In this document: piece after piece, positions 11,267 through 64,000 of the stretch
Layout of the letters: every line of letters starts with the position of its first letter
How positions within the stretch are numbered: the first letter of the stretch is position 1
Virus record (IMG/VR): IMGVR_UViG_3300017917_003143
Coordinates: 279,633-343,632 of that record
Length of the DNA: 64,000 nucleotides
Reading direction: 5' to 3' (one strand)
Position numbers and translations under genes: made by a program
The notes under the pieces: generated by a model
Databases searched by the model: none
What the model saw: only the letters and a program-made list of their open reading frames with translations
What the model was told of the DNA's origin: nothing

Positions 11267-11854
11267 ATGACTACAGCATTTGTATTAGGCAACGGCCGCA
11301 GCCGACAAACAGTTGATCTTGAACAGCTCAAACAGCGTGGGCCAGTCTATGCTTGCAACGCTATCTACAGAGAGTTCACGCCCACTGTGCTTGTGGCCAC
11401 CGATCGGCCCATAGCAGAAGCCATACAAAATTCAGGCTACAGTTTGCAAAACAGATTCCACACACGTCAGCCACTGCCCAATCTAGGTGCCCTGCCGTTG
11501 GATTCAAGATATCGAGGATTTAGTTCTGGGCCCAATGCTGTGGCCCTGGCCTGCAAAGATGGATTCCAGCGTATTTTTATGTTGGGATTTGATCTTGGAA
11601 CTACAAACGGACAGTTCAACAATCTTTACGCTGACACAGAATTTTACAAAAAAAGTTCAGCGCCGCCTACATTCAGCGGAAACTGGGTGAAACAGATAGT
11701 GCAACTGGCCAACGAGTACTCGACCAGAGAATTTATACGGGTAATGGGCCCTGAATCAGCCATGATACCCAGTTTTAACAACATTAAAAATCTACGTGAG
11801 ATGGCAATTCTGGAATTCAAAGACCTGCTAAATACATCAAAAGGCTTGCTATGA
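11267..11854 (+). CDS. CstII/Maf(DUF115)-like Rossmann-fold transferase
   Basis: AFVLGNGRSR...VYACNAIY...VLVATD...SSGPNAVALA...GFQRIFMLGFD, echoing the GNGPS / CN / SG..A..LG...I.L.G.D pattern of GT42/Maf proteins. Confidence 0.55.
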   Translation: MTTAFVLGNGRSRQTVDLEQLKQRGPVYACNAIYREFTPTVLVATDRPIAEAIQNSGYSLQNRFHTRQPLPNLGALPLDSRYRGFSSGPNAVALACKDGFQRIFMLGFDLGTTNGQFNNLYADTEFYKKSSAPPTFSGNWVKQIVQLANEYSTREFIRVMGPESAMIPSFNNIKNLREMAILEFKDLLNTSKGLL

Positions 11855-39838: not shown

Positions 39839-40269
39839 GCAGGAACTATGCACAGGGATTCTTTGAAGTAGCGAATCCAAAAAAATATCTTGGCAAGGGC
39901 AAGCCCAAATACCGATCAGGTTGGGAACATGCCTTCATGCGTTTTTGCGACAACAATGATGCCATAGTGGGCTGGGCCAGCGAAAGCATTTCTATACCCT
40001 ATCGTAATCCACTGACAGGCAAGATGACCAACTACATTCCGGATTTCTTGATACAGTATCGCACTCGTACCAACGAAGTAAAAACCGAACTGATTGAAAT
40101 CAAACCCAAAAAGCAAAGCATTTTAGAAAGCAAGATGAGCGTGAGAGATCGTGCCATTGTTGCTGTAAACTATGCCAAATGGGACGCCGCAACCAAATGG
40201 TGTCGCCGGCAAGGGCTAACATTCCGTGTGATTACCGAAGACGATATCTTCCGCAACGGCAAGAAATAA
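39835..40269 (+). CDS. Head completion nuclease (T4 gp4-like, PD-(D/E)xK)
   Basis: YRSGWE..FM.FCD, WASE...IPY, Y.PDF, LIEIKP, VN.AKW.AA..WC. Confidence 0.85.
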   Translation: MSRNYAQGFFEVANPKKYLGKGKPKYRSGWEHAFMRFCDNNDAIVGWASESISIPYRNPLTGKMTNYIPDFLIQYRTRTNEVKTELIEIKPKKQSILESKMSVRDRAIVAVNYAKWDAATKWCRRQGLTFRVITEDDIFRNGKK

Positions 40270-47143: not shown

Positions 47144-47343
47144 CCGCAGAAGAACTACAGAGACTCGCTGGTATAGGAGTTTATCGACCATATAACCTGC
47201 CTCCAACGGCAGGTTCTAACATCAGCATCACTGGCAATGAAAAAGGCGAGCTGATGAAAAAACACAACATCCAGCCAGGCACACCTGAGTGGTTCCAGTT
47301 ATGGTTCAGTAAGCCTTACTTGACTGGTGAGCATCCTCTTTGA
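47140..47343 (+). CDS. Small hypothetical protein (67 aa)
   Basis: ATGA-coupled; ELQRLAGI motif. Confidence 0.65.
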   Translation: MTAEELQRLAGIGVYRPYNLPPTAGSNISITGNEKGELMKKHNIQPGTPEWFQLWFSKPYLTGEHPL

Positions 47344-47851
47344 GACCCAAGTAAAGATTCCAGCTGGGGTGCCGTACACCGCGATAGGTGCTTTTCACAG
47401 AGTTGACCAAGGCCCAGTAGTTAGGCTTTACAGGAGCTTTGTTTGGCCTCCAGATCTTGTTGCCTTTTTCTGAGTTACACTCTTTACAGGCAGTGACACA
47501 GTTTTCCCACGTAGTGGTTCCGCCTTGTGCTCGAGGTAGCACATGATCGATGGTGAGTTCACGGCCGTTGAATGTTTCGTCGCAGTATTGGCAAGTGAAT
47601 AGATCTCGTAGATAAAGATTCTGCCTGCTGAATCGCATGCCGCCATTTTTGCCAAAACCTCGCTTGGTCACGGCCACAGCAGGGACTCGCATCTCCAGCT
47701 TGGCGCTTCGTACGACCCAATCATCATACCATTCTAACACTTGGATTTTGTCCAAGAAGAATAGTTTAACCGCTGTTTGCCAATCAATTGTGCTGAGTGG
47801 CAAGTAATTGACCGGTTGGTAGTCCGGTGCTAATATAAGGGTATCACTCAT
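47306..47851 (-). CDS. HNH endonuclease (McrA-like)
   Basis: RDLFTCQYC...LTIDHVLPRAQGG...WENCVTACKECNSEKG. Confidence 0.92.
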   Translation of the reverse strand: MSDTLILAPDYQPVNYLPLSTIDWQTAVKLFFLDKIQVLEWYDDWVVRSAKLEMRVPAVAVTKRGFGKNGGMRFSRQNLYLRDLFTCQYCDETFNGRELTIDHVLPRAQGGTTTWENCVTACKECNSEKGNKIWRPNKAPVKPNYWALVNSVKSTYRGVRHPSWNLYLGLKEDAHQSSKAY

Positions 47852-53100: not shown

Positions 53101-53115
53101 TATATACGAGCACTC

Positions 53116-53148
53116 AGCACAAGGGTATCTTGCCCTTGTGCTTCTTCT
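53116..53148 (+). terminator. Hairpin / terminator between gp32 and uvsX
   Basis: AGCACAAGGG-TATCTTG-CCCTTGTGCT then TCTTCT. Confidence 0.65.
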
Positions 53149-53165
53149 CAAACAATAGGTGAAAT

Positions 53166-54227: not shown

Positions 54228-54467
54228 ATGTCAGTGGAATTAGCAAGTGAACTTTGGTCAGAAATCAAACGATATGTCAACTCTGTAGACCGTAACGAAG
54301 CCGCAGAAACCGTAGTTAGTATTCTCATCGACAACGACATTGATGCAGAAGATATCAAATCAGCTTTCAAAGGTGATGGTGATATCAAACGTGCATTGGC
54401 AGAATATCTCAAGGAAGAAGAAGAACTTGAGGAAGAAGAAGAGGATGACTACGAGGATGACTATTGA
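54228..54467 (+). CDS. Small acidic hypothetical protein
   Basis: 79 aa with poly-E/D tail; SD AGGAGG. Confidence 0.7.
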   Translation: MSVELASELWSEIKRYVNSVDRNEAAETVVSILIDNDIDAEDIKSAFKGDGDIKRALAEYLKEEEELEEEEEDDYEDDY

Positions 54468-55726
54468 TGAAAGACAAGAAGTATTTTCCTATTAAGACTG
54501 CCACAGCATGTCAACTTAAATGGAGCTGGAGTACAATTTTATTGTGGCAAGGCATAACAAGATCTTGCCACAGAACATCAGATTCAGAATTGACTGCAGA
54601 AAACTTCTTCGACTTTCATAATACCAAACTCAAACTGCAAGACAGACAGGCCATGCTCGATGGGCAATGGCCGGAAAAAAACTGTTCTTATTGTAAAAAT
54701 ATCGAAGCTCGTGGTGGTACAAGCGATCGTATACGCATGACAAGCATACCTGACCTTTACCCCAACGAGTTAGATGATGATCCTACAAAACTCATAGTCG
54801 ATCCTTCTATAGTTGAAGTATATTTCAACAATACTTGTAATCTTGGTTGCTTGTACTGTAATTTAGGATTTAGTTCGGTTAATGAAGACGAAAATCGGCG
54901 TTACGGTGATTTCCGTTACGGTGAAGTTCGACTGATCGCGAGGCCCAAAGGACAGTATAAAAATCTTGTTCCTTATTTTTGGAAATGGTTTGAAAAAGAT
55001 TTTCAGAAAGTCAAACGACTGCATATACTTGGCGGAGAACCGTTTTTACAAAAAGAGTTGTTTGTGCTGTTAGACAAGATCGAACAGTTACCCAATCCCA
55101 ACTGCGAACTAAATGTAGTCACAAACTTGATGTGCGACGAAAAAGTACTGGATGAGTTTATAGCCCGTTGCAAAAAACTATTAGTTGGTCGAGCACTCAA
55201 AAGAGTTGATATCACTTGTAGCATCGATTGCTGGGGCGCCGATCAAGAACATGTGCGTTGGGGGATCAAGATGGATCAATGGGAAAAAAACTTTCGCACC
55301 TTGCTACAATACAAATGGCTGAAAATCAATATCAACCAAACGATCACTGTGTTAACGATAAAAACCATGCCAGACCTCCTGAGAAAATTAAAGGAATGGC
55401 AAAAGATACATCCTGTTGGGCATTTCTTCAGCGAAGGTGAACCTCTAATCGAATGTTTAGAAATTGATGTCCTGGGCCATGATATTTTTAGCAAAGAGAT
55501 CAGTGAAATCTTAGATATCATGCCAGAAACCAATGACGAAGAAATCTTGACAAAAAAGTACATGGATAGTATACTGTCAAAACTCGTTGGAACTAAACCC
55601 GATCCGAGACGCATGAAAGATCTAAAGGCTTTCTTAGATGAAAAGGATCGTAGACGTGGCACTGACTGGAAACAAGTTTTCCCCTGGGTACAAGAAGAAT
55701 TTAAAAAATGTGGTATAGCCGAGTAG
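54467..55726 (+). CDS. Radical SAM protein
   Basis: CNLGCLYC (CxxxCxxC), GGEPF; N-terminal Cys cluster (SCH...CSYC). Confidence 0.88.
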   Translation: MKDKKYFPIKTATACQLKWSWSTILLWQGITRSCHRTSDSELTAENFFDFHNTKLKLQDRQAMLDGQWPEKNCSYCKNIEARGGTSDRIRMTSIPDLYPNELDDDPTKLIVDPSIVEVYFNNTCNLGCLYCNLGFSSVNEDENRRYGDFRYGEVRLIARPKGQYKNLVPYFWKWFEKDFQKVKRLHILGGEPFLQKELFVLLDKIEQLPNPNCELNVVTNLMCDEKVLDEFIARCKKLLVGRALKRVDITCSIDCWGADQEHVRWGIKMDQWEKNFRTLLQYKWLKININQTITVLTIKTMPDLLRKLKEWQKIHPVGHFFSEGEPLIECLEIDVLGHDIFSKEISEILDIMPETNDEEILTKKYMDSILSKLVGTKPDPRRMKDLKAFLDEKDRRRGTDWKQVFPWVQEEFKKCGIAE

Positions 55727-56160
55727 TAGCGAACTTAGGATCGATTCCTGACTTTATAGCACACTATGAACGTGAGCTAGATGAAGCACGTCGGGAATGC
55801 CGCATCGGTGGAATGGTCGAACACAACATCAAAGAACTTCCGGGCATCACCGAACATAGATTCAATCAACTGCAAGAGATAGAAGCAGTACTCAACTATC
55901 TCAACATACAACTACGAAAAATCCGCCGCCGCCACTTTCAGAAGTATCTCGAAGCATATCAACGTGCCTTGACATCAAGAGATGCTGAAAAGTATGTAGA
56001 TGGTGAAGATGAAGTCATAGACTTTGAAACTATCATCAACGAAGTAGCCTTGTTGCGTAACAAGTGGCTGGGTATCATGAAAGGTCTGGATACCAAGCAG
56101 TGGCAGATGGGGCATATCGTGCGACTGCGTACTGCAGGCATGGAAGATATACAGGTATGA
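55708..56160 (+). CDS. uvsY: Recombination mediator UvsY-like
   Basis: 150 aa helical; LR.IR..HF..YLE.Y...LTSRDAEKYVDGE...LLRNKWLGI.KG. Confidence 0.75.
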   Translation: MWYSRVVANLGSIPDFIAHYERELDEARRECRIGGMVEHNIKELPGITEHRFNQLQEIEAVLNYLNIQLRKIRRRHFQKYLEAYQRALTSRDAEKYVDGEDEVIDFETIINEVALLRNKWLGIMKGLDTKQWQMGHIVRLRTAGMEDIQV

Positions 56161-57179
56161 CCTCTCGTTTGCGTAGAGCAGACCCTTATGTATATTATGA
56201 TGTATGGAGAAACATTGGATCATATGCGTTGAGATCCGGAGAGTTCTCCTCCATACTTGAACAGGATTTTGAGACAGCTGGAATACCCAAAGATCAAGTC
56301 AAAGATTTTGTCTGGATATTTGATCACAAGCCCGAGGGCATCTCTGCAGAAGACATGCAAGGCTTTTATGAATATTTTAAAAGTCTTGGAGTTCCAGACA
56401 AAAACTTTCGTGTGGCATTTAGTTGCGTAGAAGACATTGACGCATTGCCATATCCAGCTGTGTGTTTACCGGATCGCTTGATCTACAATGGCAATTGGTA
56501 CATGCATCTCAAGCACTACAACATTGACTGGGAAAATTTGCCAATGACTCACAAGATAGTGTGTTTAATGCGCAGGCCCAGCGTAGGACGAGGCAATCTA
56601 GCCAAGCGATTATTGGCCAAGATTGGGCCAGACAATCTCATAATGACTTTTGGTACCAATGGCGAGCACTGTGACGAATCAGTCAAAAAGCTAATATGGC
56701 CACATTCATTTCCCATGATCGTGGACAGACCCATGGCCGACCAAGTGTTCCAGCATCGTATAGATCATGATTTTTTCTACAAGGCTCCTGTGAACTTGAT
56801 AGTAGAGAGTTCCAGCCAAATAGATCCAAACACTTGGCGCAGTATTTTTATCACAGAAAAGACATTCAAAGCCCTGGCTTGGTATCAGTTTCCAATGTGG
56901 TATGCAGTACCAGGTCTGGTTGATCAAGTCCGACAGATGGGCTTTGATGTGTTTGATGATATTTTCAACGGTCATGTGTATGACAAAGAATCTGATCCTT
57001 GGGTGCGTATGACCCAAGTTGTGCAGTTGGCCAAACAGATGTGTGATCAAGACTTGCCACGATTGAGAAAAGCACACTGGCACCGGCTACAAAAAAATGC
57101 AGAGCTGATTGAAAAGATACATAATGAAGCAATTACAAAACATACACAAGCATTACATAAACTAACCAATGACATCTAA
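56157..57179 (+). CDS. Putative glycosyltransferase-like protein, paralog of 9224
   Basis: Start ATG 56157; NLIVES...FITEKTFKA...QMGFDVFDD. Confidence 0.5.
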   Translation: MTSRLRRADPYVYYDVWRNIGSYALRSGEFSSILEQDFETAGIPKDQVKDFVWIFDHKPEGISAEDMQGFYEYFKSLGVPDKNFRVAFSCVEDIDALPYPAVCLPDRLIYNGNWYMHLKHYNIDWENLPMTHKIVCLMRRPSVGRGNLAKRLLAKIGPDNLIMTFGTNGEHCDESVKKLIWPHSFPMIVDRPMADQVFQHRIDHDFFYKAPVNLIVESSSQIDPNTWRSIFITEKTFKALAWYQFPMWYAVPGLVDQVRQMGFDVFDDIFNGHVYDKESDPWVRMTQVVQLAKQMCDQDLPRLRKAHWHRLQKNAELIEKIHNEAITKHTQALHKLTNDI

Positions 57180-57930
57180 ATTTGTTAATCCTCAAGCCAG
57201 TCATGAACACAGTCTGAGAACGCTCAACGACCTGTATGAGCATGACGATTTCATGGAAAGCGTAGGCCGTGTGGTAGATCTTGGTTGCGGATACGATGCT
57301 TTAGATCTGCAATGGTGGGCCACACGGACCACACGCGACGATGATCCTCTACCGTTGAATATACAGTGCGTTGGTATTGATCTGATTGATACGATCAGTA
57401 GAGAAGCAAGACAAAACAACGTAACATATCAGCGCGGAGATTTGGAAACAGTACAACAGCCCAAACGTGCTTATGACATAGTGTGGTGTCACGATACTTT
57501 CCAGTACATGATCAACCCGCTACAATGTTTGGTCAATTGGCGTAACTTATGCACAGCCAACGGAATGTTAGTATTGATACTACCACAAACTACCAACATA
57601 GAATTCAATCGACAGGCATTCGATCAACCATCAGGATGCTACTATAATCATACCATGGTCAGTCTCATACACATGCTGGCCGTCACAGGATGGGATTGTC
57701 GTAGCGGATTTTTTAAAAAAGCACCCAACGATCCATGGCTACATGCCATAGTTTACAAGAGCGATCAAGAGCCCAGCGATCCACGTGGTACCTCATGGTA
57801 CAGTCTTGCCGAAAAGGGTCTACTACCGGCCAGCGCAGAAGAATCTATCAACAAATACGGTTACTTGCGACAGCACGATCTTGTGTTACCTTGGATTGAC
57901 AAGAGCCTGAGCTGGATGGGGCATCAGTAA
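57169..57930 (+). CDS. Class I SAM-dependent methyltransferase
   Basis: VVDLGCG, VGIDL, YDIVWCHD.FQY, G.LVL.LP. Confidence 0.85.
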   Translation: MTSKFVNPQASHEHSLRTLNDLYEHDDFMESVGRVVDLGCGYDALDLQWWATRTTRDDDPLPLNIQCVGIDLIDTISREARQNNVTYQRGDLETVQQPKRAYDIVWCHDTFQYMINPLQCLVNWRNLCTANGMLVLILPQTTNIEFNRQAFDQPSGCYYNHTMVSLIHMLAVTGWDCRSGFFKKAPNDPWLHAIVYKSDQEPSDPRGTSWYSLAEKGLLPASAEESINKYGYLRQHDLVLPWIDKSLSWMGHQ

Positions 57931-57954
57931 TCCAAGACCGTAATATGTGCCTAT

Positions 57955-57962
57955 TATAAATA
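57955..57962 (+). promoter_or_regulatory. T4-type late promoter TATAAATA
   Basis: Exact T4 gp55 consensus, 5 nt before ATG 57968. Confidence 0.75.
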
Positions 57963-57967
57963 TGCAC

Positions 57968-58732
57968 ATGAACAAAATCGTATTGGTTACCGGGGGATTT
58001 GACCCTGTACATTCTGGACACATCGCGTATTTCAAAGCCGCACGAGCTCTCGGCGACACTCTAATCGTTGGATTAAATTCTGACGAATGGCTCGAGCGTA
58101 AAAAAGGACGTGCATTCATGCCATGGAATGAGCGTCTTTGCGTGATCAATAATCTATCCATGGTCGATGAAGTCTACACGTTTGATGATGAAGACGGATC
58201 AGCCCGACATTTTATACAACAGGTGCGGGCACACTATCCCATGGCTGAGCTGATATTTGCCAATGGTGGCGATCGCACAGACAAAAACATTCCTGAAATG
58301 GATGTTGTTGACCCCAATCTAAAATTTGTGTTTGGTGTGGGCGGATTCAACAAGGCCAACTCCAGTAGCTGGATACTGGAAGAATGGCGAGCACCAAAGA
58401 CAGAAAGACCTTGGGGGTATTATCGTGTGCTACATGAACCTAACAAAAATGTAAAACTAAAAGAGCTCACGGTCGAACCTGGCAAAACTCTCAGCATGCA
58501 ACGCCATGCTGATCGAGGAGAGCTTTGGTTTGTCAGCGAAGGCGAAGCTACGCTGTACACGATCAACCGAAAATCTGACGCAGAGCTACACGGTCGATAC
58601 ACACGCAATCAAATGATCGTAATCAATCGTCAAGAGTGGCATCAGCTGGCCAACGAAGGCACAGAACCTCTCAAAGTCATCGAAATACAATACGGTGATC
58701 GATGTGAGGAAAATGACATAGAACGACAATGA
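57968..58732 (+). CDS. HIGH-motif nucleotidyltransferase (TagD/RfaE-like) fused to cupin (mannose-6-phosphate isomerase type II-like)
   Basis: GGFDPVHSGH, VGLNSD, FANGGDR; then RPWG.Y.V, LSMQRH..R.E.W, IEIQYG...E.DIER. Confidence 0.88.
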   Translation: MNKIVLVTGGFDPVHSGHIAYFKAARALGDTLIVGLNSDEWLERKKGRAFMPWNERLCVINNLSMVDEVYTFDDEDGSARHFIQQVRAHYPMAELIFANGGDRTDKNIPEMDVVDPNLKFVFGVGGFNKANSSSWILEEWRAPKTERPWGYYRVLHEPNKNVKLKELTVEPGKTLSMQRHADRGELWFVSEGEATLYTINRKSDAELHGRYTRNQMIVINRQEWHQLANEGTEPLKVIEIQYGDRCEENDIERQ

Positions 58733-59415
58733 ATGACATTATTCCTATCTTTGTAGGATATGATCCGCGAGAAGCTATAGCCTTTCACACTTGTGTGAAC
58801 TCAATCATACGTCATGCTACACAACCAGTGGCCATACATCCAGTAGCTCTCAATCTGTTTAAAGACTACAATGAGACACACACTGACGGTAGCAATCATT
58901 TTATCTACACGCGATTCCTTGTGCCGCACTTGATGGGTTGGAAAGGTTGGGCTATATTCATTGACGGTGACATGATCTTGAGAGATGATATCACCAAACT
59001 CTGGAATCTACGTGAGACAGACAAAGATGTCATGGTAATCAAACACGATTACAAAACCCGTATGCCTGTAAAATACTTAGGAGCAAAGAATGAAGACTAT
59101 CCTAGAAAAAATTGGAGTAGTGTTATTTTGTGGAATTGTAGTAGCTTTCCTAACAGGAAACTTACCCCTGAGTTCGTCCAACAATCCACGGGTAGTTTCC
59201 TCCACCGTTTCTCGTGGTTAAACGATGAACGAATCGGTGAGCTACCACCCGAGTGGAATTGGTTACCCGATGAATACGGTGTCAATCCTGATGCCAAGCT
59301 CTTGCACTATACTCTAGGTACGCCCTGCTTCCATGAATTTGCCGACACACCACAAAGTGAAGAATGGCATAGAGAACGCATACTAACAGAATACTGCCAA
59401 CAAAGGAACATATAA
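58729..59415 (+). CDS. GT-A glycosyltransferase (GT8-like)
   Basis: IFVGYDPRE, FIYTRFLVP, FIDGD (DxD), KNWSSV, LP.EWN, HYT.G.P. Confidence 0.8.
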   Translation: MNDIIPIFVGYDPREAIAFHTCVNSIIRHATQPVAIHPVALNLFKDYNETHTDGSNHFIYTRFLVPHLMGWKGWAIFIDGDMILRDDITKLWNLRETDKDVMVIKHDYKTRMPVKYLGAKNEDYPRKNWSSVILWNCSSFPNRKLTPEFVQQSTGSFLHRFSWLNDERIGELPPEWNWLPDEYGVNPDAKLLHYTLGTPCFHEFADTPQSEEWHRERILTEYCQQRNI

Positions 59416-59416
59416 A

Positions 59417-60070
59417 ATGATAGACCAACTGGAAATGAGAGAAGGCCTTTGGTGGCCAAAAAATGAAGTCAGGTGTTTCAATTGGACCAAGAAAGAATCG
59501 GACCTGCCTGAGCACTTGATGACACATGTTCCTGAAAAGAAAGTCATGGTACAAGCCGGGGGCAACATGGGTTGGTTCACCCAGATATATGCCAAACAGT
59601 TTGAACGGGTGTATGTGTTTGAACCCGATAACATAAATTTCCTTTGCCTGACTCTTAATAATCCCGAGCGCCATGTCATGAAATATCAGGCCTGCATTGG
59701 TAACGAGCGCAACCTGGTCAGTGTGACCTGGAGAGAGGATGATCGAGGTAAAAATCACATAGCCGGCGGACAAGATCTAGTAAAGATGGCCAAGAAGGGC
59801 AAGCAGGCAGACAACATACCCACCTTGATGATCGACGACTTAAATCTTGATGCATGTTCTTACATACACTTGGACATTGAAGGATTTGAATGGTTTGCTC
59901 TTAACGGTGCAGAACAAACAATCAAAAAATATCTGCCGATCATCGCTGTGGAAGAAGCTGGGCACGGCCTGAGATATGACAAACCTTTTCCTGAAGTTGA
60001 AAAATATCTTGCTCAGTTTGGATATAGAATCATAGACAGATATCGACACGAAGCAGTTTTTTCTGTATGA
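59417..60070 (+). CDS. FkbM-family methyltransferase
   Basis: QAGGNMG, VYVFEPD, IDDLNL, IHLDIEGFE..AL.GA..TI. Confidence 0.9.
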   Translation: MIDQLEMREGLWWPKNEVRCFNWTKKESDLPEHLMTHVPEKKVMVQAGGNMGWFTQIYAKQFERVYVFEPDNINFLCLTLNNPERHVMKYQACIGNERNLVSVTWREDDRGKNHIAGGQDLVKMAKKGKQADNIPTLMIDDLNLDACSYIHLDIEGFEWFALNGAEQTIKKYLPIIAVEEAGHGLRYDKPFPEVEKYLAQFGYRIIDRYRHEAVFSV

Positions 60071-60822
60071 AAGCATTTGTAATCTATTTGCCCACCCGGC
60101 CACACAGCGTTGAATCGTCTGCTGTGATGATAAAAAATCTCAAGAGATACGGAATCGACGCTGAACTGTTTGAAGGGACCACCGGTGACCAAGCCGTAGC
60201 CTTGGCTGAAAAATCTAAAAAAACTCTGTATCCATACAGCATCAAAAACCGAGTGCTTGACGAGCATGATGTTGAGCAGTTGATACGTCCAGAACTATAC
60301 GAAGAATTTAAAAAAAAGCATCGTTATGAAATAATCGAGCGCCAGTTAATCGACGAAACAGAACAAGCCAAGATGAGTCGTCCGGGAGTGATTGGGTGTT
60401 TCTATAGCCACTACAACTTATGGAAACGATGTGTAGATCTTGATGAACCCATCATGATTTTTGAAGATGACGTTAAATTCTATCGTGGTTACTATCCTGT
60501 AGAGTTTGATGGGGTCTTGATCTTGAGCCTGGGAAAAAGCTCGTTTATGTCAGACCCACAAAAGAGCTATCTCGAAAACCCAACAGGCCCTGTACAAGCT
60601 CGTAAATGGCAAAATTTTAGCATGCCTGGCGCCAGTGGTTATGCCATACAGCCCGATGCCGCGAGAGCACTGATTAAATTTTATCGACCTTATTGGTACC
60701 CGGCAGACAATGCTATAAATCAGTTTGTGGTTCCTATACACATCAGTACCTACATCATGGGCCGCAACACTTTGCCCGAGGAAGGAAACATCTCAATGAC
60801 CAAGGCCAAGGATTGGTTATGA
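60067..60822 (+). CDS. GT25-like glycosyltransferase
   Basis: KAFVIYL, IGCFYSH..LW..C, IFEDD, GASGY.I.P..A. Confidence 0.82.
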   Translation: MKAFVIYLPTRPHSVESSAVMIKNLKRYGIDAELFEGTTGDQAVALAEKSKKTLYPYSIKNRVLDEHDVEQLIRPELYEEFKKKHRYEIIERQLIDETEQAKMSRPGVIGCFYSHYNLWKRCVDLDEPIMIFEDDVKFYRGYYPVEFDGVLILSLGKSSFMSDPQKSYLENPTGPVQARKWQNFSMPGASGYAIQPDAARALIKFYRPYWYPADNAINQFVVPIHISTYIMGRNTLPEEGNISMTKAKDWL

Positions 60823-61727
60823 AGGTAGGAATATTTTACAACTCAATCAGCAATCCTGCCAAGTTTTCCAACAAAGTGATGTTAATGGACAACTTCAAAG
60901 CTGGTGTGCTGGCCAATGGCGATGAAGTAATAGAGTTTAAAGATAACAATTTGCCCAACCAGCCATTGGGTGCTGGATTCGTTCTTGGCTACACGCTGGA
61001 AGATAATTTTAGAAAAAAGATCATTGACTGTTTGCGCAATCAAAACACACCTGCTATCTTTGTTGACAGCAACATCCTGCACTATGCAAGAAAAGAACAC
61101 GAGTGGCACAGATACAGTTTAGGCAGTGTCTACCCAGATTCGGGAACTTATTTCTTTGGAGAACTGGACAGAACCAAGTGGCAAACTTACAGTGCCTGGC
61201 ACAGTGCTGAATTAAAGCCCTGGCGGACAGCAGGACAACACATACTGATACTCTGCCAGAGACCCAAGGGATTTAACATGTTCACAGATCAGGAAGCCTG
61301 GCTAGATGCGACCATTGCCAAGATTCGCAAACATAGCCAACGTCCTATAATGATCCGGATGCACCCTGGTGACGGAACCAGAGAAAAACAAATACACAAG
61401 ATCCAGAAAAAGTACGGAACCACGGTCACGATATCCACGCATGACAACATACGCGAAGCTCTGGTCAATTGTTGGTGTACTGTGGGATTAAACTCAACAC
61501 CAAATGTAGTCGCGGCCATCGAAGGTATACCGGGTTACATCGAAGATCCTCAGCACAGCTGGGCCAACGGAATCGCGTTTACTGACTTGTCTCAGATTGG
61601 GAACCCGCCCAGGCCAGATCGCACAGAGTGGATCCATAAGATTGCCAACATACACTGGAGCAATCAAGAAGTAAGATCGGGAAAACTCTGGTCAACAATC
61701 AAGACTTATATCGAGCAGTCTCGTTGA
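60819..61727 (+). CDS. KpsS/KpsC-like (capsule synthesis, GT-B) protein
   Basis: Start ATG 60819; ILILCQ, I.IR.HP, NST..V.A.I.GIP. Confidence 0.55.
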   Translation: MKVGIFYNSISNPAKFSNKVMLMDNFKAGVLANGDEVIEFKDNNLPNQPLGAGFVLGYTLEDNFRKKIIDCLRNQNTPAIFVDSNILHYARKEHEWHRYSLGSVYPDSGTYFFGELDRTKWQTYSAWHSAELKPWRTAGQHILILCQRPKGFNMFTDQEAWLDATIAKIRKHSQRPIMIRMHPGDGTREKQIHKIQKKYGTTVTISTHDNIREALVNCWCTVGLNSTPNVVAAIEGIPGYIEDPQHSWANGIAFTDLSQIGNPPRPDRTEWIHKIANIHWSNQEVRSGKLWSTIKTYIEQSR

Positions 61728-62490
61728 CGAATACTGCCAATTCTTTCCTGGTGCCTTTGGCAGTCCAAATATAACTGTCAGGGTGCATGTTCCAATCAAT
61801 GTAAGACATAGGTAGTTGCCCATGCTGATATCGAGGAACGATAGGATCTAATACATCTTGATCCAACCCCCAGTAAACATAATCGCGCTCAAACCAAGAT
61901 TTTAATTCTTGTGCGTAATCTGACAGGAATTGTTGGCATGCAGGAGTAGCATTGAGCCAAAGGCCTCCTGCAAGGTATCTGGCACGTTTACCAGTGATGT
62001 GATGTATATAAAAATCGTGTGATTCATTGAGAGCAGGCACGCTCTTCCGTACCACAGCATCTACATCGATGGCCAATACTTGAGTGCGCCGATATAGGTC
62101 AGACAAACGAATGAATCTGGCACAAGCATAGTATGTTTTTTGCAGGCGCTCAATCACGCTACGATCATTGCCTTTGCCCATGGCGTTTAAAGTCCGATCA
62201 TAACGACTTTTTTCTGGCTCTGTGATGGGTACTTGTGCCCAACGCTGTGCGGCTGGTCTAAATAGATCTTCTGTGACGTGTTCCCAGGACACTGAAACTT
62301 TTTTCTCCTGACAAAAATCAATTTGATCGTTGCGTGGATTGAACAAGTGCAAATGTATGCTCAATTTTGTGTTGTGCTGGATACTGTTTATGAACGCATG
62401 ACCGAATTCATCAAAGTATTGTGAGTCACAAGCAGAGTAGACAAATAAATCTTGATGATGGCAGGTTCCGTGTAGCTCGGGTAACTTCAT
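61699..62490 (-). CDS. Putative GT-A nucleotide-sugar transferase
   Basis: Start ATG 62490; YYACARF, AIDVD (DxD), WGLDQD.L. Confidence 0.55.
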   Translation of the reverse strand: MKLPELHGTCHHQDLFVYSACDSQYFDEFGHAFINSIQHNTKLSIHLHLFNPRNDQIDFCQEKKVSVSWEHVTEDLFRPAAQRWAQVPITEPEKSRYDRTLNAMGKGNDRSVIERLQKTYYACARFIRLSDLYRRTQVLAIDVDAVVRKSVPALNESHDFYIHHITGKRARYLAGGLWLNATPACQQFLSDYAQELKSWFERDYVYWGLDQDVLDPIVPRYQHGQLPMSYIDWNMHPDSYIWTAKGTRKELAVFVNETARYKS

Positions 62491-62491
62491 A

Positions 62492-62505
62492 GTTAAATAT
62501 TTAAC
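62492..62505. promoter_or_regulatory. Palindromic bidirectional late promoter
   Basis: GTTAAATATTTAAC, a perfect 14-bp palindrome with TAAATA on both strands, between divergent ATGs 62490 and 62509. Confidence 0.75.
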
Positions 62506-62508
62506 CTT

Positions 62509-63360
62509 ATGATCATCGCCTATTTTCCAAAACAATGTGCCCAAAACAGTGGTCCTGTCTTGGAAGCCATGCTGGCCAGTTTGAAAGCCGCTGGCCACAC
62601 CTGTGTTGAAAACAGTTATGATGCAGATGCGGCCATCATATGGTCGGTGTTGTGGTCGGGACGCATGGCTCGCAATCATGAAGTCTGGGTGCGATATAGA
62701 GATGCCAAGAAGCCAGTGATCGTAGTAGATGTGGGTGCTTTGTATCGCGGCGAAACCTGGAAGATAGCGGTAAACTCGATCACGGCCAATGGCTATTATG
62801 GACACACAGAAAACCTGGATTGGGATCGCCCTAAAAAGTTAGGCATCAGCTTGGCCATCAACCTCAGTCGTAATCCCAGGATCGTCATTGCGGCACAGCA
62901 TGCCCGCAGTCTACAGGTGGCAGGTTTGGTTAGCATAGAAGGTTGGATCTGGTCTCAGGTGGAAGAACTTAGAAAGGTCACAGACAGGCCCATAGTGGTC
63001 AGACCTCATCCTAGGAGCCCGCTTGATAGCTCCATCCATATCCATTTGCCCAAGGATGTAATAATAGAACAGCCGCAGAAAATAGCCAACACCTACGACA
63101 GCTATAACTTGGCCTTTGATTGCCATGCCATGGTCAACCATAATTCAGGTCCTGGCATACAGGCTGCCTTGGCTGGAACCAGACCCATTGTGGATTCTAG
63201 CAGTCTAGCACACCCAGTCAGCATCCGCATAGAGGACATCGAACAGCCTTACACAGTAGATCGCGATCAGTGGCTGGTAGAAATATGCCACACAGAATAC
63301 ACAGTAGATGAAATAAAACAAGGGCGATGGATAGACCGCCTACAGCCAGGACTCAGATGA
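62509..63360 (+). CDS. KpsS/KpsC-like protein, paralog of 60819
   Basis: IVIAAQ, IVVRPHP, NSGPGIQAALAG, DR.QWL..I... Confidence 0.55.
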   Translation: MIIAYFPKQCAQNSGPVLEAMLASLKAAGHTCVENSYDADAAIIWSVLWSGRMARNHEVWVRYRDAKKPVIVVDVGALYRGETWKIAVNSITANGYYGHTENLDWDRPKKLGISLAINLSRNPRIVIAAQHARSLQVAGLVSIEGWIWSQVEELRKVTDRPIVVRPHPRSPLDSSIHIHLPKDVIIEQPQKIANTYDSYNLAFDCHAMVNHNSGPGIQAALAGTRPIVDSSSLAHPVSIRIEDIEQPYTVDRDQWLVEICHTEYTVDEIKQGRWIDRLQPGLR

Positions 63361-64000
63361 CAGAAGAAACCAAAGAAGAAAAAAGGAAGCGCAAACTGGA
63401 AGCCATGGCCCAGCGCGATCAAAAAATAACTGCTGGCTTTGTTGACTGTGCTTGCCTTATACATGACACACTCTACGACTGGACTTATGTAGAGCGTCTG
63501 TACAACAGCTTGTGTAGGAATCTGACTCCGCAGGTACGTTTACATGTTTACACAGAAAAGAATCGCCCAGTTCCAGATCATATGATACATCATCCACTGC
63601 AAGAATGGCCTGGCATACGAGGTCCAAAAAGATCCTGGTGGTATAAAATACAGTTGTTTAATTCCCAATATCACAGCAATCCTATGATTTATTTTGATCT
63701 GGATACAGTGATCACAGGAAACATCGATTGGATCTGGCGCTTGCCTACCGCACAGTTTTGGGCAGTGCAAGACTTTAAGTATCTTTTCAAAAGCAGGAAT
63801 CCAGTGATCAATAGTTCCGTGATGTGGTTCAATCCTGCACAATGGAATCATGTCTATCAAGAATTTGACCCAGATGAAATAGTCAGAGCACGTGGAAAAT
63901 GGCACGGTGATCAAGATTTCATACAGGAAAAGATACCCATGGAGAAATGCCGTTATTTTCCCATAGATCAGGTGCGTAGCTGGCGCTGGGAACTCAAAGA
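63357..64000 (+). CDS. GT-A glycosyltransferase (truncated by window edge)
   Basis: Manual translation from ATG 63357: ...YVERLYNSL.RNL...WWYKIQLF...YFDLDTVITGNID...NSSVMWF...GDQDFI. Not in the ORF track. Confidence 0.75.
   Translation, partial: MTEETKEEKRKRKLEAMAQRDQKITAGFVDCACLIHDTLYDWTYVERLYNSLCRNLTPQVRLHVYTEKNRPVPDHMIHHPLQEWPGIRGPKRSWWYKIQLFNSQYHSNPMIYFDLDTVITGNIDWIWRLPTAQFWAVQDFKYLFKSRNPVINSSVMWFNPAQWNHVYQEFDPDEIVRARGKWHGDQDFIQEKIPMEKCRYFPIDQVRSWRWELK

What the first reader, a model, noticed from the sequence alone, without database searches (positions are those of the whole stretch)
54467..64000. Glycan-biosynthesis cluster that is largely under late-type promoters
Seen: about ten contiguous genes (GT10-like, SAM methyltransferase, nucleotidyltransferase-cupin, GT8-like, FkbM, GT25, two KpsS-like, two more GT-A, plus a radical SAM gene). 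An exact TATAAATA sits at 57955 and a bidirectional TAAATA palindrome at 62492. Knowledge: T4 DNA-glucosylating enzymes are made before the late phase, some mycobacteriophages glycosylate virion proteins, and KpsS/KpsC use CMP-Kdo. Inference: late timing plus this many linkage types points to a methylated oligosaccharide built on the virion or host surface rather than on DNA.
Basis: partly seen in the sequence, partly recalled or inferred. Interest (0 to 1): 0.8.

Follow-up and report, generated by a model that had tools for sequence, protein, structure and literature searches.

The report
Late-expressed sugar-building island in jumbo phage
A giant freshwater phage related to T4 carries a block of about ten sugar-adding and methylating enzymes, most behind late-type promoter motifs like those before its particle genes, so it probably decorates something made late in infection, most likely its own particle, with a variable methylated sugar chain.

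Summary
Window 56157-64000 carries ten back-to-back soluble glycan enzymes: a GT-B transferase, two methyltransferases, a nucleotidyltransferase-cupin fusion, GT8-like, GT25, two further GT-A enzymes and two paralogs with the beta-Kdo-transferase fold. A radical SAM gene and uvsY lie just upstream.

The late-promoter claim is supported by comparison, not by the exact 8-mer (3 copies against 1.8 expected). The core TAAATA occurs 30 times, 24 of them in the 5% of the window that is intergenic, and it precedes portal, sheath and fibre genes. It lies upstream of 76% of nucleotidyltransferase homologs, almost always as TAAATA-N5-ATG, and of 85% of the minus-strand GT-A homologs. It is absent before uvsX, uvsY and the first methyltransferase. 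So eight of ten genes sit behind late-type motifs; the first two ride the uvsX-uvsY operon.

Relatives (at least 597 related viral contigs) keep the nucleotidyltransferase plus GT8 core but swap the other genes, as O-antigen loci do. There are no membrane or export genes.

The glycan's target is unresolved. I favour virion proteins (0.45), then host envelope (0.22), then DNA (0.17). The "KpsS-like" pair lacks the QXXXD aspartate, and GT10 membership is unconfirmed. No expression data exist.

The parts
54467..55726 (+). Twitch-domain radical SAM protein. It is coupled to the acidic 79-aa gene upstream and to uvsY downstream. Its link to the glycan is unproven.
   Evidence: Pfam Radical_SAM. NCBIfam NF033640, 220.9 bits, above the 170 cut-off. 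Present in 32 of 80 related loci, often in several copies.
55708..56160 (+). UvsY-like recombination mediator. Not a glycan gene. It separates the radical SAM gene from the island and anchors the island's position.
   Evidence: phrog_231, E 6e-14. 58-100% identical in 57 loci. No TAAATA upstream in 44 distinct sequences.
56157..57179 (+). Its start overlaps the uvsY stop (ATGA).
   Evidence: No Pfam or NCBIfam hit. AF2 pLDDT 90.5. PDB matches are all GT-B enzymes, best E 8e-4, with fucosyltransferase 13 only at rank 44. BFVD matches are uncultured phage proteins, E down to 7.5e-15. Invariant E217..S219..T233-E234-K235. Present in 5 of 80 loci.
57169..57930 (+). Class I SAM-dependent methyltransferase, overlapping the end of the GT-B gene. 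In most relatives it directly follows uvsY.
   Evidence: Methyltransf_11, E 3.5e-8. DLGCG motif conserved. 0 of 20 distinct upstream sequences have TAAATA.
57955..57962 (+). T4-type late-promoter motif TATAAATA (core TAAATA at 57957-57962), followed by 5 nt and then ATG 57968. This predicts a leaderless or near-leaderless late mRNA.
   Evidence: TAAATA lies upstream of 38 of 50 distinct homolog upstream regions, 35 of them at exactly N5. Background is 0.7% of random 40-nt windows.
57968..58732 (+). Fusion of a nucleotidyltransferase (HxGH class, like RfaE domain II and TagD) with a PMI-type cupin. It is the head of the late operon and part of the conserved core. Presumably it isomerises and activates a sugar phosphate.
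   Evidence: PF01467, E 8e-14, and PF01050, E 5e-22. TIGR02199, 2.5e-21, and TIGR01479 C-terminus, 1.8e-19, both below the equivalog cut-offs. PDB cytidylyltransferases. GGFDPxHSGH conserved in 54 of 55. At least 8000 clusters in metagenomes.
58729..59415 (+). GT8-like GT-A glycosyltransferase, the most conserved island gene. Its start overlaps the nucleotidyltransferase stop.
   Evidence: PF01501, 29.4 bits, and phrog_28018, E 2e-36. F(I/V/M)DGDM in 63 of 64 homologs. At least 597 IMG/VR relatives, with the listed best 80 at 81-100% identity. Fused to a KpsS-like domain in variant L082.
59417..60070 (+). FkbM-family methyltransferase, a likely sugar O-methyltransferase.
   Evidence: PF05050, E 8e-12. 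TIGR01444, E 2e-11.
60067..60822 (+). GT25-family glycosyltransferase.
   Evidence: PF01755, 66.5 bits. EDD motif in 11 of 12 homologs.
60819..61727 (+). Beta-Kdo-transferase-fold protein, paralog 1 (motif QRPKG). Last gene of the plus-strand late operon.
   Evidence: Paralog of 62509-63360. Member of alignment A1. RMHPG and NS motifs present, glycine at Q+4.
61699..62490 (-). GT-A glycosyltransferase (GT8 / Nucleotid_trans-like), transcribed divergently from 62509-63360.
   Evidence: No Pfam hit. Atlas neighbours carry PF01501 or PF03407, and fusions to Capsule_synth and FkbM exist. DxD in 15 of 15. TAAATA upstream in 11 of 13 distinct homolog regions, mostly at N7.
62492..62505 (.). Perfect 14-bp palindrome GTTAAATATTTAAC that reads TAAATA on both strands: N7 before ATG 62490 on the minus strand and N9 before ATG 62509 on the plus strand. 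A candidate bidirectional late promoter.
   Evidence: The palindrome is kept in 11 of the 14 relatives of the minus-strand GT-A gene (protein identity down to about 40%), and 12 of 14 have TAAATA upstream.
62509..63360 (+). Beta-Kdo-transferase-fold protein, paralog 2 (motif QHARS).
   Evidence: AF2 pLDDT 89.4. Top 24 PDB matches are KpsC, WbbB and KrkA, E down to 7e-7, probability 1.0. HMM aligns RPHPG and NS.G.EA to WbbB 253-318. Serine at Q+4.
63357..64000 (+). GT-A glycosyltransferase, distantly GT8-like, cut at residue 214 by the window and contig end. Last gene of the island.
   Evidence: PF01501, E 0.0055, below cut-off. Family profile hits the GT8 Skp1 galactosyltransferase 6mw5 at E 0.06. 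DLD in 31 of 31. The full-length L003 homolog has 255 aa and is followed by an AAA ATPase and a helicase.
11267..11854 (+). Outside the finding: a conserved 195-aa GT42/Maf-like (sialyltransferase-like) protein inside the virion module, upstream of the giant fibre genes. It may belong to the same glycosylation function.
   Evidence: phrog_4603, E 9e-8. PF01973, E 1e-3. Profile A6 hits nine GT42 sialyltransferases at E 0.006-0.04 with both motifs aligned. 2490 homolog clusters. Homologous to CcrColossus gp126, hhalign probability 91.7.

Best explanation
The window is the last 64 kb of a 343.6-kb freshwater jumbo phage of the T4 superfamily. Its nearest isolates are the Rak2/CBB/GAP32-like phages. 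Between uvsY and an AAA-ATPase/helicase module it carries a hypervariable glycan island.

Proposed mechanism; every step below is inferred.
1. Late in infection a gp55-type polymerase starts at TAAATA motifs and makes near-leaderless mRNAs for three units: 57968-61727 (+), 62490-61699 (-) and 62509 to beyond 64000 (+).
2. The nucleotidyltransferase-cupin fusion converts a host sugar phosphate into a nucleotide-activated sugar.
3. The tightly coupled GT8-like enzyme uses that sugar, or host UDP-hexose, for the first or an early sugar.
4. The two beta-Kdo-transferase-fold enzymes, GT25 and the two other GT-A enzymes extend the chain. The KpsS-like pair probably draws on a host CMP-activated sugar such as CMP-Kdo, because the phage encodes no synthetase.
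5. FkbM and the class I methyltransferase O-methylate the chain.

All these enzymes are soluble and there is no flippase, polymerase or exporter. So the chain is built in the cytoplasm on an acceptor present late, most likely virion proteins (fibres, tail-tube-like protein or capsid).

Gene content turns over between close relatives. That pattern suggests selection for glycan diversity on an exposed structure.

Confidence differs by part. That this is a late-motif-driven cytoplasmic glycan-building island: about 0.8. That the acceptor is virion protein: 0.45 (the value given).
For: Lineage and position.

Enzyme identities and conserved catalytic motifs.

Late motif.
- TAAATA sits before portal, sheath, fibre and other virion genes.
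- Of 30 sites, 24 are intergenic.
- It is upstream of 76% of nucleotidyltransferase homologs (35 of 38 at N5) and 85% of minus-strand GT-A homologs. It is upstream of 0% of uvsX, uvsY, methyltransferase and AAA-ATPase homologs. Background is 0.7%.
- CBB and GAP32 have ATAAATA before structural genes plus a gp55-like sigma factor.

Cytoplasmic assembly: no hydrophobic segment in any product, maximum KD19 1.27.

Hypervariability around a conserved core.

Heavy methylation and sugar-nucleotide supply in relatives. These include methyltransferases, MetK, SAH hydrolase, a UDP-L-FucNAc-type trio and UDP-glucose dehydrogenase.

Links to virion or late genes.
- A core GT42-like gene lies inside the virion module.
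- In the unrelated siphophage CcrColossus the tail protein gene is followed by a GT42-like gene (probability 91.7) and a KpsS-like gene (probability 98.8, E 9.5e-17). A GT8-like gene, a gene annotated as family 9 glycosyltransferase and the lysis cassette follow.
- In a 44-kb podovirus, FkbM plus GT8-like lie between capsid and tail genes.
- The tail-tube-like protein 38280-39482 ends in a Pro/Thr/Ser-rich tail. This recalls the glycosylated C-termini of mycobacteriophage capsid and tube proteins (Freeman 2023, as cited in PMC12619734).

Fusions GT8+KpsS-like and GT-A+Capsule_synth tie these enzymes to one pathway.
Against: - There is no expression, glycoproteomic or chemical evidence of any kind, and no RNA run was listed.
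- Late timing is inferred from a motif. gp55 and gp33 homologs were not looked for in this genome.
- The island sits among recombination and replication genes, not inside the virion module.
- Two of its genes are co-transcribed with uvsX and uvsY.
- In pelagiphage Mosig the equivalent cluster and the GT42-like gene lie next to RNR, primase, gp59 and gp32 genes.
- The enzyme families (GT8, GT25, RfaE-like, Kdo-transferase-like) are those of LPS core synthesis, which fits the host-envelope rival.
- The Pro/Thr-rich tail is not conserved in distant relatives.
- No acceptor is identified, and no donor sugar could be assigned.
Confidence: 0.45

Rival explanations
1. Host-envelope remodelling. The soluble transferases act at the cytoplasmic face of the inner membrane on host lipid A-core, an undecaprenyl-linked intermediate or a lyso-phosphatidylglycerol capsule primer. 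Host Lpt, Wzx or ABC machinery exports the altered glycan. This would change the cell surface, for example to stop progeny or competing phages adsorbing to infected cells and debris.
For: - The families are the classic LPS/LOS and capsule set. These are GT8, GT25, an RfaE-domain-II-like nucleotidyltransferase, the beta-Kdo-transferase fold and FkbM.
- The atlas lists bacterial LPS 3-alpha-galactosyltransferases as structural neighbours of the model of the top-ranked atlas hit for the minus-strand GT-A, not of the GT-A's own structure.
- In cyanophage S-SCSM2R the GT8-like homolog sits beside KdsB and KdsA.
- The O-antigen-like turnover of gene content fits a surface antigen.
Against: - No initiating phosphoglycosyltransferase, flippase, polymerase, ligase or transporter is present, and no membrane segment at all.
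- Late-type promoters leave little time for export to pay off in a lytic jumbo phage.
- Homologous modules sit next to tail, capsid and lysis genes in other phages.
- The KpsS-like copies lack the catalytic aspartate of true capsule and O-antigen Kdo transferases.
Confidence: 0.22
2. DNA hypermodification. Some or all of the transferases glycosylate, and then methylate, a hydroxylated base (5hmC, 5hmU or 5hoC) on phage DNA before packaging, to evade restriction. Gene turnover would be driven by type IV restriction.
For: - The island is flanked by gp32, uvsX, uvsY and a helicase.
- The GT-B gene and a methyltransferase are in the uvsX-uvsY operon.
- The window encodes a T4-type dNMP kinase.
- Known DNA transferases include both GT-A and GT-B folds and often neighbour replication genes (bioRxiv 10.1101/2023.12.21.572611).
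- Polyarabinosylation occurs on DNA, and many hypermodifications are installed late (PMC13326640).
Against: - Known systems cluster with a thymidylate-synthase homolog or a 5mYOX dioxygenase, plus nucleotide kinase or dCTPase genes.
- None of these appeared among the 25 Pfam families that could be read from the scan of 49 recurrent gene clusters within 10 kb in 80 loci. That inventory was incomplete.
- Seven transferases plus several O-methyltransferases would greatly exceed any DNA glycan in the papers read here; the longest there is tri-arabinose.
- Most enzymes are acidic or neutral (pI 5.3-6.9), a weak argument.
- Homologous modules lie in tail and lysis regions of other phages.
Confidence: 0.17
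3. The glycan is a free cytoplasmic product, such as a methylated polysaccharide or a glycosylated small molecule. It would tune host metabolism or act as a decoy and would not be attached to virion, DNA or envelope.
For: All enzymes are soluble. Methylation is heavy. No acceptor is identifiable.
Against: There is no precedent in phages. Strong gene turnover suggests an exposed, recognised structure. The association with tail and capsid genes elsewhere is not explained.
Confidence: 0.08

Closest known systems
Mycobacteriophage virion glycosylation (Che8-type; Freeman et al. 2023, as cited in PMC12619734)
   Same: Both have phage-encoded glycosyltransferases together with methyltransferases. 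Glycans there are attached in the cytoplasm to C-terminal parts of capsid and tail-tube subunits. Here a tail-tube-like protein carries a Pro/Thr-rich C-terminal tail, and homologous enzyme modules lie next to tail or capsid genes in other phages.
   Different: The phage lineage is different (T4-superfamily jumbo myovirus, presumably with a Gram-negative freshwater host) and so are the enzyme families. There are far more enzymes. The island lies among recombination genes. No glycoprotein has been shown.
Chlorovirus and Mimivirus autonomous capsid or fibril glycosylation machinery (for example PBCV-1 A064R and A075L; PMC11571054)
   Same: The virus encodes several soluble GT-A and GT-B transferases plus methyltransferases and builds methylated oligosaccharides in the cytoplasm without host ER or export machinery. 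A Mimivirus-clade protein is among the structural relatives of the GT-B enzyme.
   Different: Those are eukaryotic giant viruses. No homology was shown beyond fold. The chemistry and acceptors here are unknown.
Retaining beta-Kdo glycosyltransferases KpsC/KpsS (GT107), WbbB (GT99) and KrkA (GT140)
   Same: Same modified GT-B-like fold; the top 24 PDB matches have probability 1.0. Same HP and NS.G.EA nucleotide-binding motifs. The glutamine lies at the same 37-residue distance from HP.
   Different: The aspartate nucleophile of QXXXD is Ser or Gly in both window copies and in 107 of the 150 best family representatives; 28 of 150 keep Asp. The proteins are single-module, about 280-300 aa, and virus-encoded. 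No Kdo pathway genes are present.
T4-type late promoters (TATAAATA, gp55/gp33/gp45) and the ATAAATA motif of Rak2-like phages CBB and GAP32 (PMC5259590)
   Same: A -10-only A/T motif lies upstream of virion genes. One exact TATAAATA precedes the island's core operon.
   Different: The working core here is the 6-mer TAAATA. It often sits only 5-9 nt from the ATG, implying leaderless or near-leaderless mRNAs, and in one case it forms a 14-bp palindrome serving two divergent genes. None of this is tested experimentally.
Phage DNA glycosylation systems (T4 alpha/beta-GT; arabinosyl-5hoC of RB69 and DLP3, PMC13326640; 5mYOX-linked transferases, bioRxiv 10.1101/2023.12.21.572611)
   Same: Phage-encoded transferases, sometimes several in series, sometimes with their own sugar-nucleotide pathway, lying near replication genes. 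Modification can be late.
   Different: Those clusters contain a thymidylate-synthase homolog or a dioxygenase, and kinases. Their glycans are 1-3 sugars. No such partner gene was seen near this island.
Bacterial O-antigen and LOS outer-core loci; 'LPS gene' islands of T4-like cyanophages and pelagiphages (Mosig, S-SCSM2R)
   Same: Same enzyme families and the same pattern of a conserved anchor with swapped transferase and methyltransferase cassettes. Mosig has GT8-like, two KpsS-like genes, a GT-A related to the last island gene, and genes annotated as two methyltransferases and a sulfotransferase.
   Different: No Wzx/Wzy, ABC transporter or initiating transferase genes. The function of the phage islands is untested in any system.

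Membership tests
T4-type (gp55-dependent) late promoter | -10-only motif TATAAATA or a close variant | tested here: met
   Exact TATAAATA at 57955. TAAATA core at 62494 (+) and 62498 (-).
T4-type (gp55-dependent) late promoter | The same motif precedes virion structural genes and is depleted elsewhere | tested here: met
   It lies before portal, sheath, four fibre genes and other structural genes. 24 of 30 sites lie in about 5.4% intergenic DNA.
T4-type (gp55-dependent) late promoter | Motif conserved at orthologous positions | tested here: met
   38 of 50 (35 at N5) and 11 of 13 distinct upstream regions, against 0.7% background and 0% before uvsX and uvsY.
T4-type (gp55-dependent) late promoter | Phage encodes gp55-like sigma factor and co-activators | not tested
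A gp55-like gene is reported in the relative CBB.
T4-type (gp55-dependent) late promoter | Transcripts start about 6 nt downstream and appear late | not testable with these tools
   No RNA run was listed.
Retaining beta-Kdo glycosyltransferases (GT99/GT107/GT140; KpsS/KpsC, WbbB, KrkA) | Characteristic modified GT-B-like fold | tested here: met
   The top 24 Foldseek PDB hits are KpsC, WbbB and KrkA, E 7e-7 to 2e-4, probability 1.0.
Retaining beta-Kdo glycosyltransferases (GT99/GT107/GT140; KpsS/KpsC, WbbB, KrkA) | HP motif and NS.G.EA CMP-binding segment | tested here: met
   The HMM aligns IvvRpHPg and nfNSspgveA to WbbB 253-318. HP is found in 142 of 150 representatives.
Retaining beta-Kdo glycosyltransferases (GT99/GT107/GT140; KpsS/KpsC, WbbB, KrkA) | Absolutely conserved QXXXD with an Asp nucleophile (PMC12887879) | tested here: not met
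   The window copies read QHARS and QRPKG. All 24 aligned phage sequences have S or G at that position or lack the Q motif. Among 150 representatives the residue is S in 66, G in 41 and D in 28. The Q position was assigned by spacing, not by structural superposition.
Retaining beta-Kdo glycosyltransferases (GT99/GT107/GT140; KpsS/KpsC, WbbB, KrkA) | Pfam PF05159 Capsule_synth match | tested here: not met
   No Pfam hit for either copy or for any of 24 family members. Only 18% of members of some atlas clusters carry PF05159.
Retaining beta-Kdo glycosyltransferases (GT99/GT107/GT140; KpsS/KpsC, WbbB, KrkA) | Uses CMP-beta-Kdo as donor | not testable with these tools
   Requires an enzyme assay.
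GT10 fucosyltransferase (for 56157-57179) | Match to PF00852 or to solved GT10 structures as best hits | tested here: not met
   No Pfam hit. PDB best hits are trehalose-phosphate synthase, TreT and MurG. FUT13 is at rank 44, E 0.14. Atlas GT10 clusters score only 0.78-0.79.
GT10 fucosyltransferase (for 56157-57179) | GT-B fold with an E..S...TEK-type donor motif | tested here: inconclusive
   The GT-B fold is clear. E217, S219 and T233-E234-K235 are invariant, but the spacing differs from the GT10 motif as I recall it.
GT8 (58729-59415) | PF01501 above the gathering score, and a DxD motif | tested here: met
   29.4 bits against 24.3 over a partial region. DGD in 63 of 64 homologs.
GT25 (60067-60822) | PF01755 above the gathering score, and an EDD motif | tested here: met
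   66.5 bits against 24. EDD in 11 of 12.
FkbM methyltransferase (59417-60070) | PF05050 / TIGR01444 above cut-off | tested here: met
   46 bits against 22.7, and 44.6 against 37.7.
HldE/RfaE domain II heptose-1-phosphate adenylyltransferase (N-terminal half of 57968-58732) | Equivalog-level score and the HxGH motif | tested here: inconclusive
   The HSGH motif is conserved. TIGR02199 scores 76 bits, far below its 181.5 cut-off. It is equally close to glycerol- and ethanolamine-phosphate cytidylyltransferases.
Phage DNA-glycosylation gene cluster | Thymidylate-synthase-homolog hydroxylase/hydroxymethylase or 5mYOX dioxygenase (with or without C5-MTase, dCTPase) in the neighbourhood | tested here: inconclusive
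   None appeared among the Pfam families reported for 49 recurrent gene clusters within 10 kb in 80 loci. Only 25 of 35 families were listed, rare genes were not scanned, and the rest of the genome was not seen.
Wzx/Wzy- or ABC-dependent surface polysaccharide locus | Initiating phosphoglycosyltransferase, flippase or polymerase, or transporter (membrane proteins) | tested here: not met
   No product has a hydrophobic 19-mer above KD 1.27. No such Pfam family was reported in relatives.
Phage virion protein glycosylation (mycobacteriophage type) | Glycan demonstrated on capsid or tail subunits | not testable with these tools
   There are only leads: the Pro/Thr-rich tail of 38280-39482, a GT42-like gene in the virion module, and synteny in CcrColossus and a podovirus.

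The most novel reading that the evidence does not exclude
An abundant, uncultured lineage of about 345-kb freshwater T4-superfamily phages carries a self-contained protein-glycosylation system. A conserved late, leaderless core operon (nucleotidyltransferase-cupin plus GT8-like) would start a glycan on virion proteins. A swappable cassette then diversifies it, giving virions a variable 'serotype' much as O-antigen loci do for bacteria. The cassette holds methyltransferases, GT-A enzymes and a very large phage-specific branch of the beta-Kdo-transferase fold that has replaced the aspartate nucleophile with Ser or Gly. That branch may have a new mechanism or a new donor. The same GT42-like / KpsS-like / GT8-like triad next to tail genes in Caulobacter siphophages would make this a widespread and so far unrecognised virion-glycosylation module of phages of Gram-negative bacteria.
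Probability: 0.3. Interest if true: 0.8.

Novelty: new variant of a known kind. Interest (0 to 1): 0.6.

Why it matters
Phage glycosylation is known for DNA (T-even phages) and, recently, for virions of mycobacteriophages. For phages of Gram-negative bacteria, virion glycans are essentially unexplored.

This island belongs to a very abundant freshwater lineage: at least 8000 90%-identity clusters of its core enzyme. Its content turns over rapidly, so whatever it decorates is under diversifying selection.

If the target is the virion, that would change how host range, grazing and immune or defence recognition of environmental jumbo phages are understood. It would also supply a large new set of soluble glycosyltransferases and sugar methyltransferases. 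These include a Ser/Gly-substituted branch of the Kdo-transferase fold with 5373 50%-identity representatives.

The conserved TAAATA-N5-ATG layout also gives a concrete, testable prediction of leaderless late transcription in this phage group.

Tried and rejected
- Megablast of 54-64 kb and 30-54 kb against the phage collection found no match. There is no close isolate.
- RNA runs: none was listed. Only pond and lake DNA contigs hold the sequence.
- Single-sequence PDB searches for 56157-57179 and 62509-63360 gave nothing meaningful. Profile searches for the two extra GT-A families gave only E of about 0.04-0.06.
- Pfam on 24 KpsS-like members gave no Capsule_synth hit.
- The exact 8-mer TATAAATA as a statistic is not enriched. 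I replaced it with the 6-mer core and comparative conservation.
- The 'moraphage' paper (PMC12619734) describes a different lineage.
- The two genes after the GT8-like gene of S-SCSM2R are not KpsS-like. The KdsA/KdsB adjacency therefore cannot be tied to that family.
- One relative cluster gave a QueF-like hit that I could not map; it is not among the 10 candidates scanned.
- Protein pI as a proxy for DNA binding is too weak to weigh.
- The Pro/Thr-rich tail as acceptor is conserved only in close relatives, so I keep it as a lead only.
- In Mosig the GT42-like gene lies by gp59 and gp32, so the link between GT42-like genes and virion modules is not general.

Full report
**What the sequence is.**
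- The window is the last 64 kb of IMG/VR contig 3300017917_003143 (343,632 bp). The window end is the contig end, so the last gene of the finding is truncated.
- Positions 303-51435 hold a T4-like virion module. It contains portal, prohead protease, major head protein, sheath, tube-like proteins, four fibre genes of up to 1534 aa, and large terminase.
- gp32, UvsX, a small acidic protein, a radical SAM protein and UvsY follow.
- UvsX is 62-68% identical to the Rak2-like and related jumbo phages Phosso, Vibrio 2.275.O, CBB, GAP32 and Atu_ph07. No isolate matches at the DNA level.
- DNA holders are pond and lake metagenomes.

**The observation.**
- Two corrections apply. uvsY (55708-56160) lies between the radical SAM gene and the glycan genes. 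The nucleotidyltransferase-cupin gene starts at ATG 57968.
- From 56157 to the window end there are ten contiguous genes, mostly with overlapping stop and start codons. Only two intergenic gaps exist: 57931-57967 and 62491-62508.
- DxD/EDD motifs, the HxGH motif and SAM-binding motifs are conserved across homologs.
- None of the products has a membrane segment.

**Family assignments.**
- 56157-57179 has no Pfam or NCBIfam hit. A confident model (pLDDT 90.5) is a GT-B glycosyltransferase. Its close structural relatives are uncharacterised phage proteins. GT10 membership is not confirmed; only an E..S..TEK-like motif and a weak atlas lead point that way.
- 62509-63360 and 60819-61727 are distant paralogs.
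  - The model of the first (pLDDT 89) matches only retaining beta-Kdo transferases at the top of the PDB list. A family profile aligns the HP and NS.G.EA segments to WbbB.
  - The defining QXXXD aspartate nucleophile (PMC12887879) is missing. The glutamine is conserved at the same 37-residue distance from HP, but Q+4 is Ser in one copy and Gly in the other.
  - The family is very large, with 5373 50%-identity representatives. Among the best 150, Q+4 is S in 66, G in 41 and D in 28.
  - These proteins work on a Kdo-transferase scaffold but cannot be filed as retaining Kdo transferases.
- The minus-strand gene and the truncated last gene are GT-A enzymes distantly related to GT8 and GT77.
- The nucleotidyltransferase-cupin joins an RfaE-domain-II/TagD-class nucleotidyltransferase to a type II PMI cupin. 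Its substrate cannot be named.

**Promoters.**
- The exact 8-mer is not enriched, so it proves nothing alone.
- The intergenic regions of the window show a clear core, TAAATA. Of 30 sites on both strands, 24 lie in the roughly 5.4% of the window that is intergenic. Twenty-one sit on the coding strand upstream of a gene, including portal, sheath, all four fibre genes and other virion genes.
- Sigma-70-like TTGACA-N16/17-TAxAxT sites occur instead at 30.3-30.7 kb, upstream of gp32, and inside the radical SAM gene upstream of uvsY.
- The CBB paper reports the same ATAAATA motif before structural genes of CBB and GAP32, and a gp55-like sigma factor (PMC5259590).
- In 80 related loci, TAAATA lies upstream of 38 of 50 distinct nucleotidyltransferase genes, 35 at exactly five nucleotides from the ATG. 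It lies upstream of 11 of 13 distinct minus-strand GT-A genes, mostly at N7. It is upstream of none of the uvsX, uvsY, first-methyltransferase or AAA-ATPase genes. The background is 0.7%.
- The palindrome GGTTAAATATTTAACC is kept wherever the divergent gene pair exists.
- In T4 the late motif spans -13 to -6 (established knowledge; Geiduschek and Kassavetis 2010, as cited in PMC5259590). By that rule TAAATA-N5-ATG predicts a transcript that begins at the A of the start codon. There is no room for a Shine-Dalgarno sequence. This leaderless arrangement is an inference.
- Operon picture:
  - gp32, then a hairpin.
  - uvsX, the acidic protein, radical SAM, uvsY, the GT-B gene and the methyltransferase, with no late motif.
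  - A late motif, then nucleotidyltransferase-cupin, GT8, FkbM, GT25 and the first KpsS-like gene.
  - The minus-strand GT-A, converging on that operon.
  - The bidirectional late motif, then the second KpsS-like gene and the last GT-A.
- No convincing terminator separates the units, so earlier read-through cannot be excluded.
- No RNA data could be found.

**Comparative anatomy.**
- The GT8-like gene has at least 597 relatives in IMG/VR; the listed best 80 are 81-100% identical. The nucleotidyltransferase-cupin has at least 8000 clusters in metagenomes.
- The island always lies after uvsY. In L003 it ends before an AAA ATPase and a helicase.
- Only the nucleotidyltransferase-cupin plus GT8 pair and one to three KpsS-like copies (175 copies in 71 loci) are near-constant. 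The GT-B gene occurs in 5 loci, GT25 in about 13 and the minus-strand GT-A in 15.
- Relatives carry other cassettes. These include many methyltransferases, SAM synthetase, a cluster in 14 loci that is probably the S-adenosylhomocysteine hydrolase seen in the scan, and a Polysacc_synt_2 / RmlD-like / Epimerase_2 trio. Others are an epimerase with UDP-glucose dehydrogenase, GT17 and extra radical SAM genes.
- Fusions GT8+KpsS-like (555 aa, L082) and GT-A+Capsule_synth tie these enzymes to one pathway.
- This is the pattern of an O-antigen-type locus: a fixed anchor with swapped decoration genes.

**What the glycan is attached to.** This is the open question.
- The enzymes are soluble and no export machinery is present. 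The chain is therefore made in the cytoplasm on something available late.
- Three lines favour virion proteins.
  1. A conserved 195-aa gene inside the virion module (11267-11854), just upstream of the fibre genes, belongs to the GT42/Maf-like sialyltransferase superfamily. The evidence is phrog_4603 at E 9e-8, and profile hits to nine Cst-type structures with both signature segments aligned.
  2. In the unrelated Caulobacter siphophage CcrColossus the giant tail protein gene is followed by a homolog of that GT42-like gene (hhalign probability 91.7) and a KpsS-like gene (probability 98.8, E 9.5e-17). The GT8-like homolog, a gene annotated as family 9 glycosyltransferase and the lysis cassette follow. 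In a 44-kb podovirus, FkbM and the GT8-like gene sit between the capsid and tail genes.
  3. The tail-tube-like protein 38280-39482 ends in a Pro/Thr/Ser-rich tail in this phage and its close relatives. This recalls the glycosylated C-termini of mycobacteriophage capsid and tube subunits (Freeman 2023, as cited in PMC12619734).
- Against this:
  - The island lies among recombination genes.
  - In pelagiphage Mosig the equivalent cluster and the GT42-like gene lie beside replication genes.
  - The Pro/Thr tail is not universal.

**Rivals.**
- Host-envelope remodelling fits the LPS-type families and the KdsA/KdsB neighbours of the GT8-like gene in cyanophage S-SCSM2R. It lacks any membrane-associated step, and late timing makes it awkward.
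- DNA hypermodification fits the replication-gene neighbourhood, the GT-B gene in the uvsX-uvsY operon and the dNMP kinase at 33171-33830. Late timing would not exclude it (PMC13326640).
  - Known DNA systems sit beside a thymidylate-synthase homolog or a 5mYOX dioxygenase and make chains of one to three sugars.
  - No such partner was seen near the island in 80 loci. That inventory was incomplete, and the rest of the genome could not be read.
- My weights: virion proteins 0.45, host envelope 0.22, DNA 0.17, free cytoplasmic glycan 0.08.

**Verdict.**
- The late-promoter reading is supported by strong comparative evidence for eight of the ten genes. It is not supported for the first two genes or for the radical SAM gene.
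- The inference 'virion or host surface rather than DNA' is plausible but unproven.
- The feature is a new variant of a known kind, a virus-encoded glycosylation cluster. Three aspects appear to be undescribed in the literature I searched:
  - The hypervariable island architecture in a very abundant uncultured jumbo-phage lineage.
  - The conserved TAAATA-N5-ATG late, leaderless core operon and the palindromic bidirectional site.
  - A very large phage branch of the Kdo-transferase fold without the aspartate nucleophile.
- Interest: 0.6.

Noticed in passing
window 11267-11854 (+): A conserved 195-aa GT42/Maf-like (sialyltransferase-like) protein lies inside the virion module, just upstream of the giant fibre genes. 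It has 2490 homolog clusters, none with a Pfam annotation. It is homologous to CcrColossus gp126, which directly follows that phage's tail protein gene.
   Followed up: partly
window 38280-39482 (+): A tail-tube-like 400-aa protein ends in a Pro/Thr/Ser-rich tail after a conserved GFFFPKVP motif. The tail is kept in close relatives (79-91% identity) and is variable or short in distant ones. It is a possible O-glycan acceptor.
   Followed up: partly
window 40275, 47857 (-), 57957, 2703, 49456, 62498 (-), 62494: Several late-type TAAATA motifs sit only 5, 7 or 9 nt from the ATG with no Shine-Dalgarno sequence. This suggests leaderless or near-leaderless late mRNAs. Other late genes have 16-32-nt leaders with a Shine-Dalgarno sequence.
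   Followed up: partly
window 47306-47851 (-): An HNH endonuclease gene on the opposite strand lies directly next to the large terminase gene. It has its own exact TATAAATA 5 nt before the ATG.
   Followed up: no
window 33171-33830 (+), 27145-27585 (-), 32647-33174 (+): A T4-type dNMP kinase, a NUDIX hydrolase and an Rv2179c-like 3'-5' exoribonuclease are present. The kinase and the exoribonuclease lie in an apparently early block (30.3-33.8 kb) with sigma-70-like promoters.
   Followed up: no
window 39835-40269 (+): A TnsA-like endonuclease N-terminal domain protein is embedded between tail genes. It may be a mobile endonuclease.
   Followed up: no
window 53101-53165: A G+C-rich hairpin followed by a T-rich run lies between gp32 and uvsX. 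Upstream of gp32 there are two sigma-70-like promoters, and a TATAAATA overlaps the spacer of the second. This layout is reminiscent of T4 gene 32 regulation.
   Followed up: no
L024:16445-17545 (-); L042:3449-4909 (-) and 13 other loci: Relatives carry S-adenosylmethionine synthetase next to uvsY. A 486-aa cluster present in 14 loci is probably the S-adenosylhomocysteine hydrolase detected in the family scan. Together these would be a phage-encoded methyl cycle beside the island.
   Followed up: partly
L046:5509-8379 (-): A relative's island appears to contain a Polysacc_synt_2 / RmlD-like / Epimerase_2 gene trio, typical of UDP-L-FucNAc-type 6-deoxy-amino-sugar synthesis. Only the RmlD-like gene was individually confirmed.
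   Followed up: partly
L082:10765-12432 (+): In one variant the GT8-like enzyme is fused to a KpsS-like domain (555 aa). The island there also gains an epimerase/dehydratase and a UDP-glucose dehydrogenase.
   Followed up: partly
related loci L001-L080 (unmapped): One recurrent gene cluster near the island in relatives hits QueF-like (PF14489), which hints at 7-deazaguanine metabolism. I could not map which locus carries it. A GGACT-like gene is at L058:13686-14099.
   Followed up: partly
L165 (Synechococcus phage S-SCSM2R) 10099-11520: This cyanophage carries genes annotated KdsB and KdsA (CMP-Kdo pathway) two genes downstream of its GT8-like homolog.
   Followed up: partly
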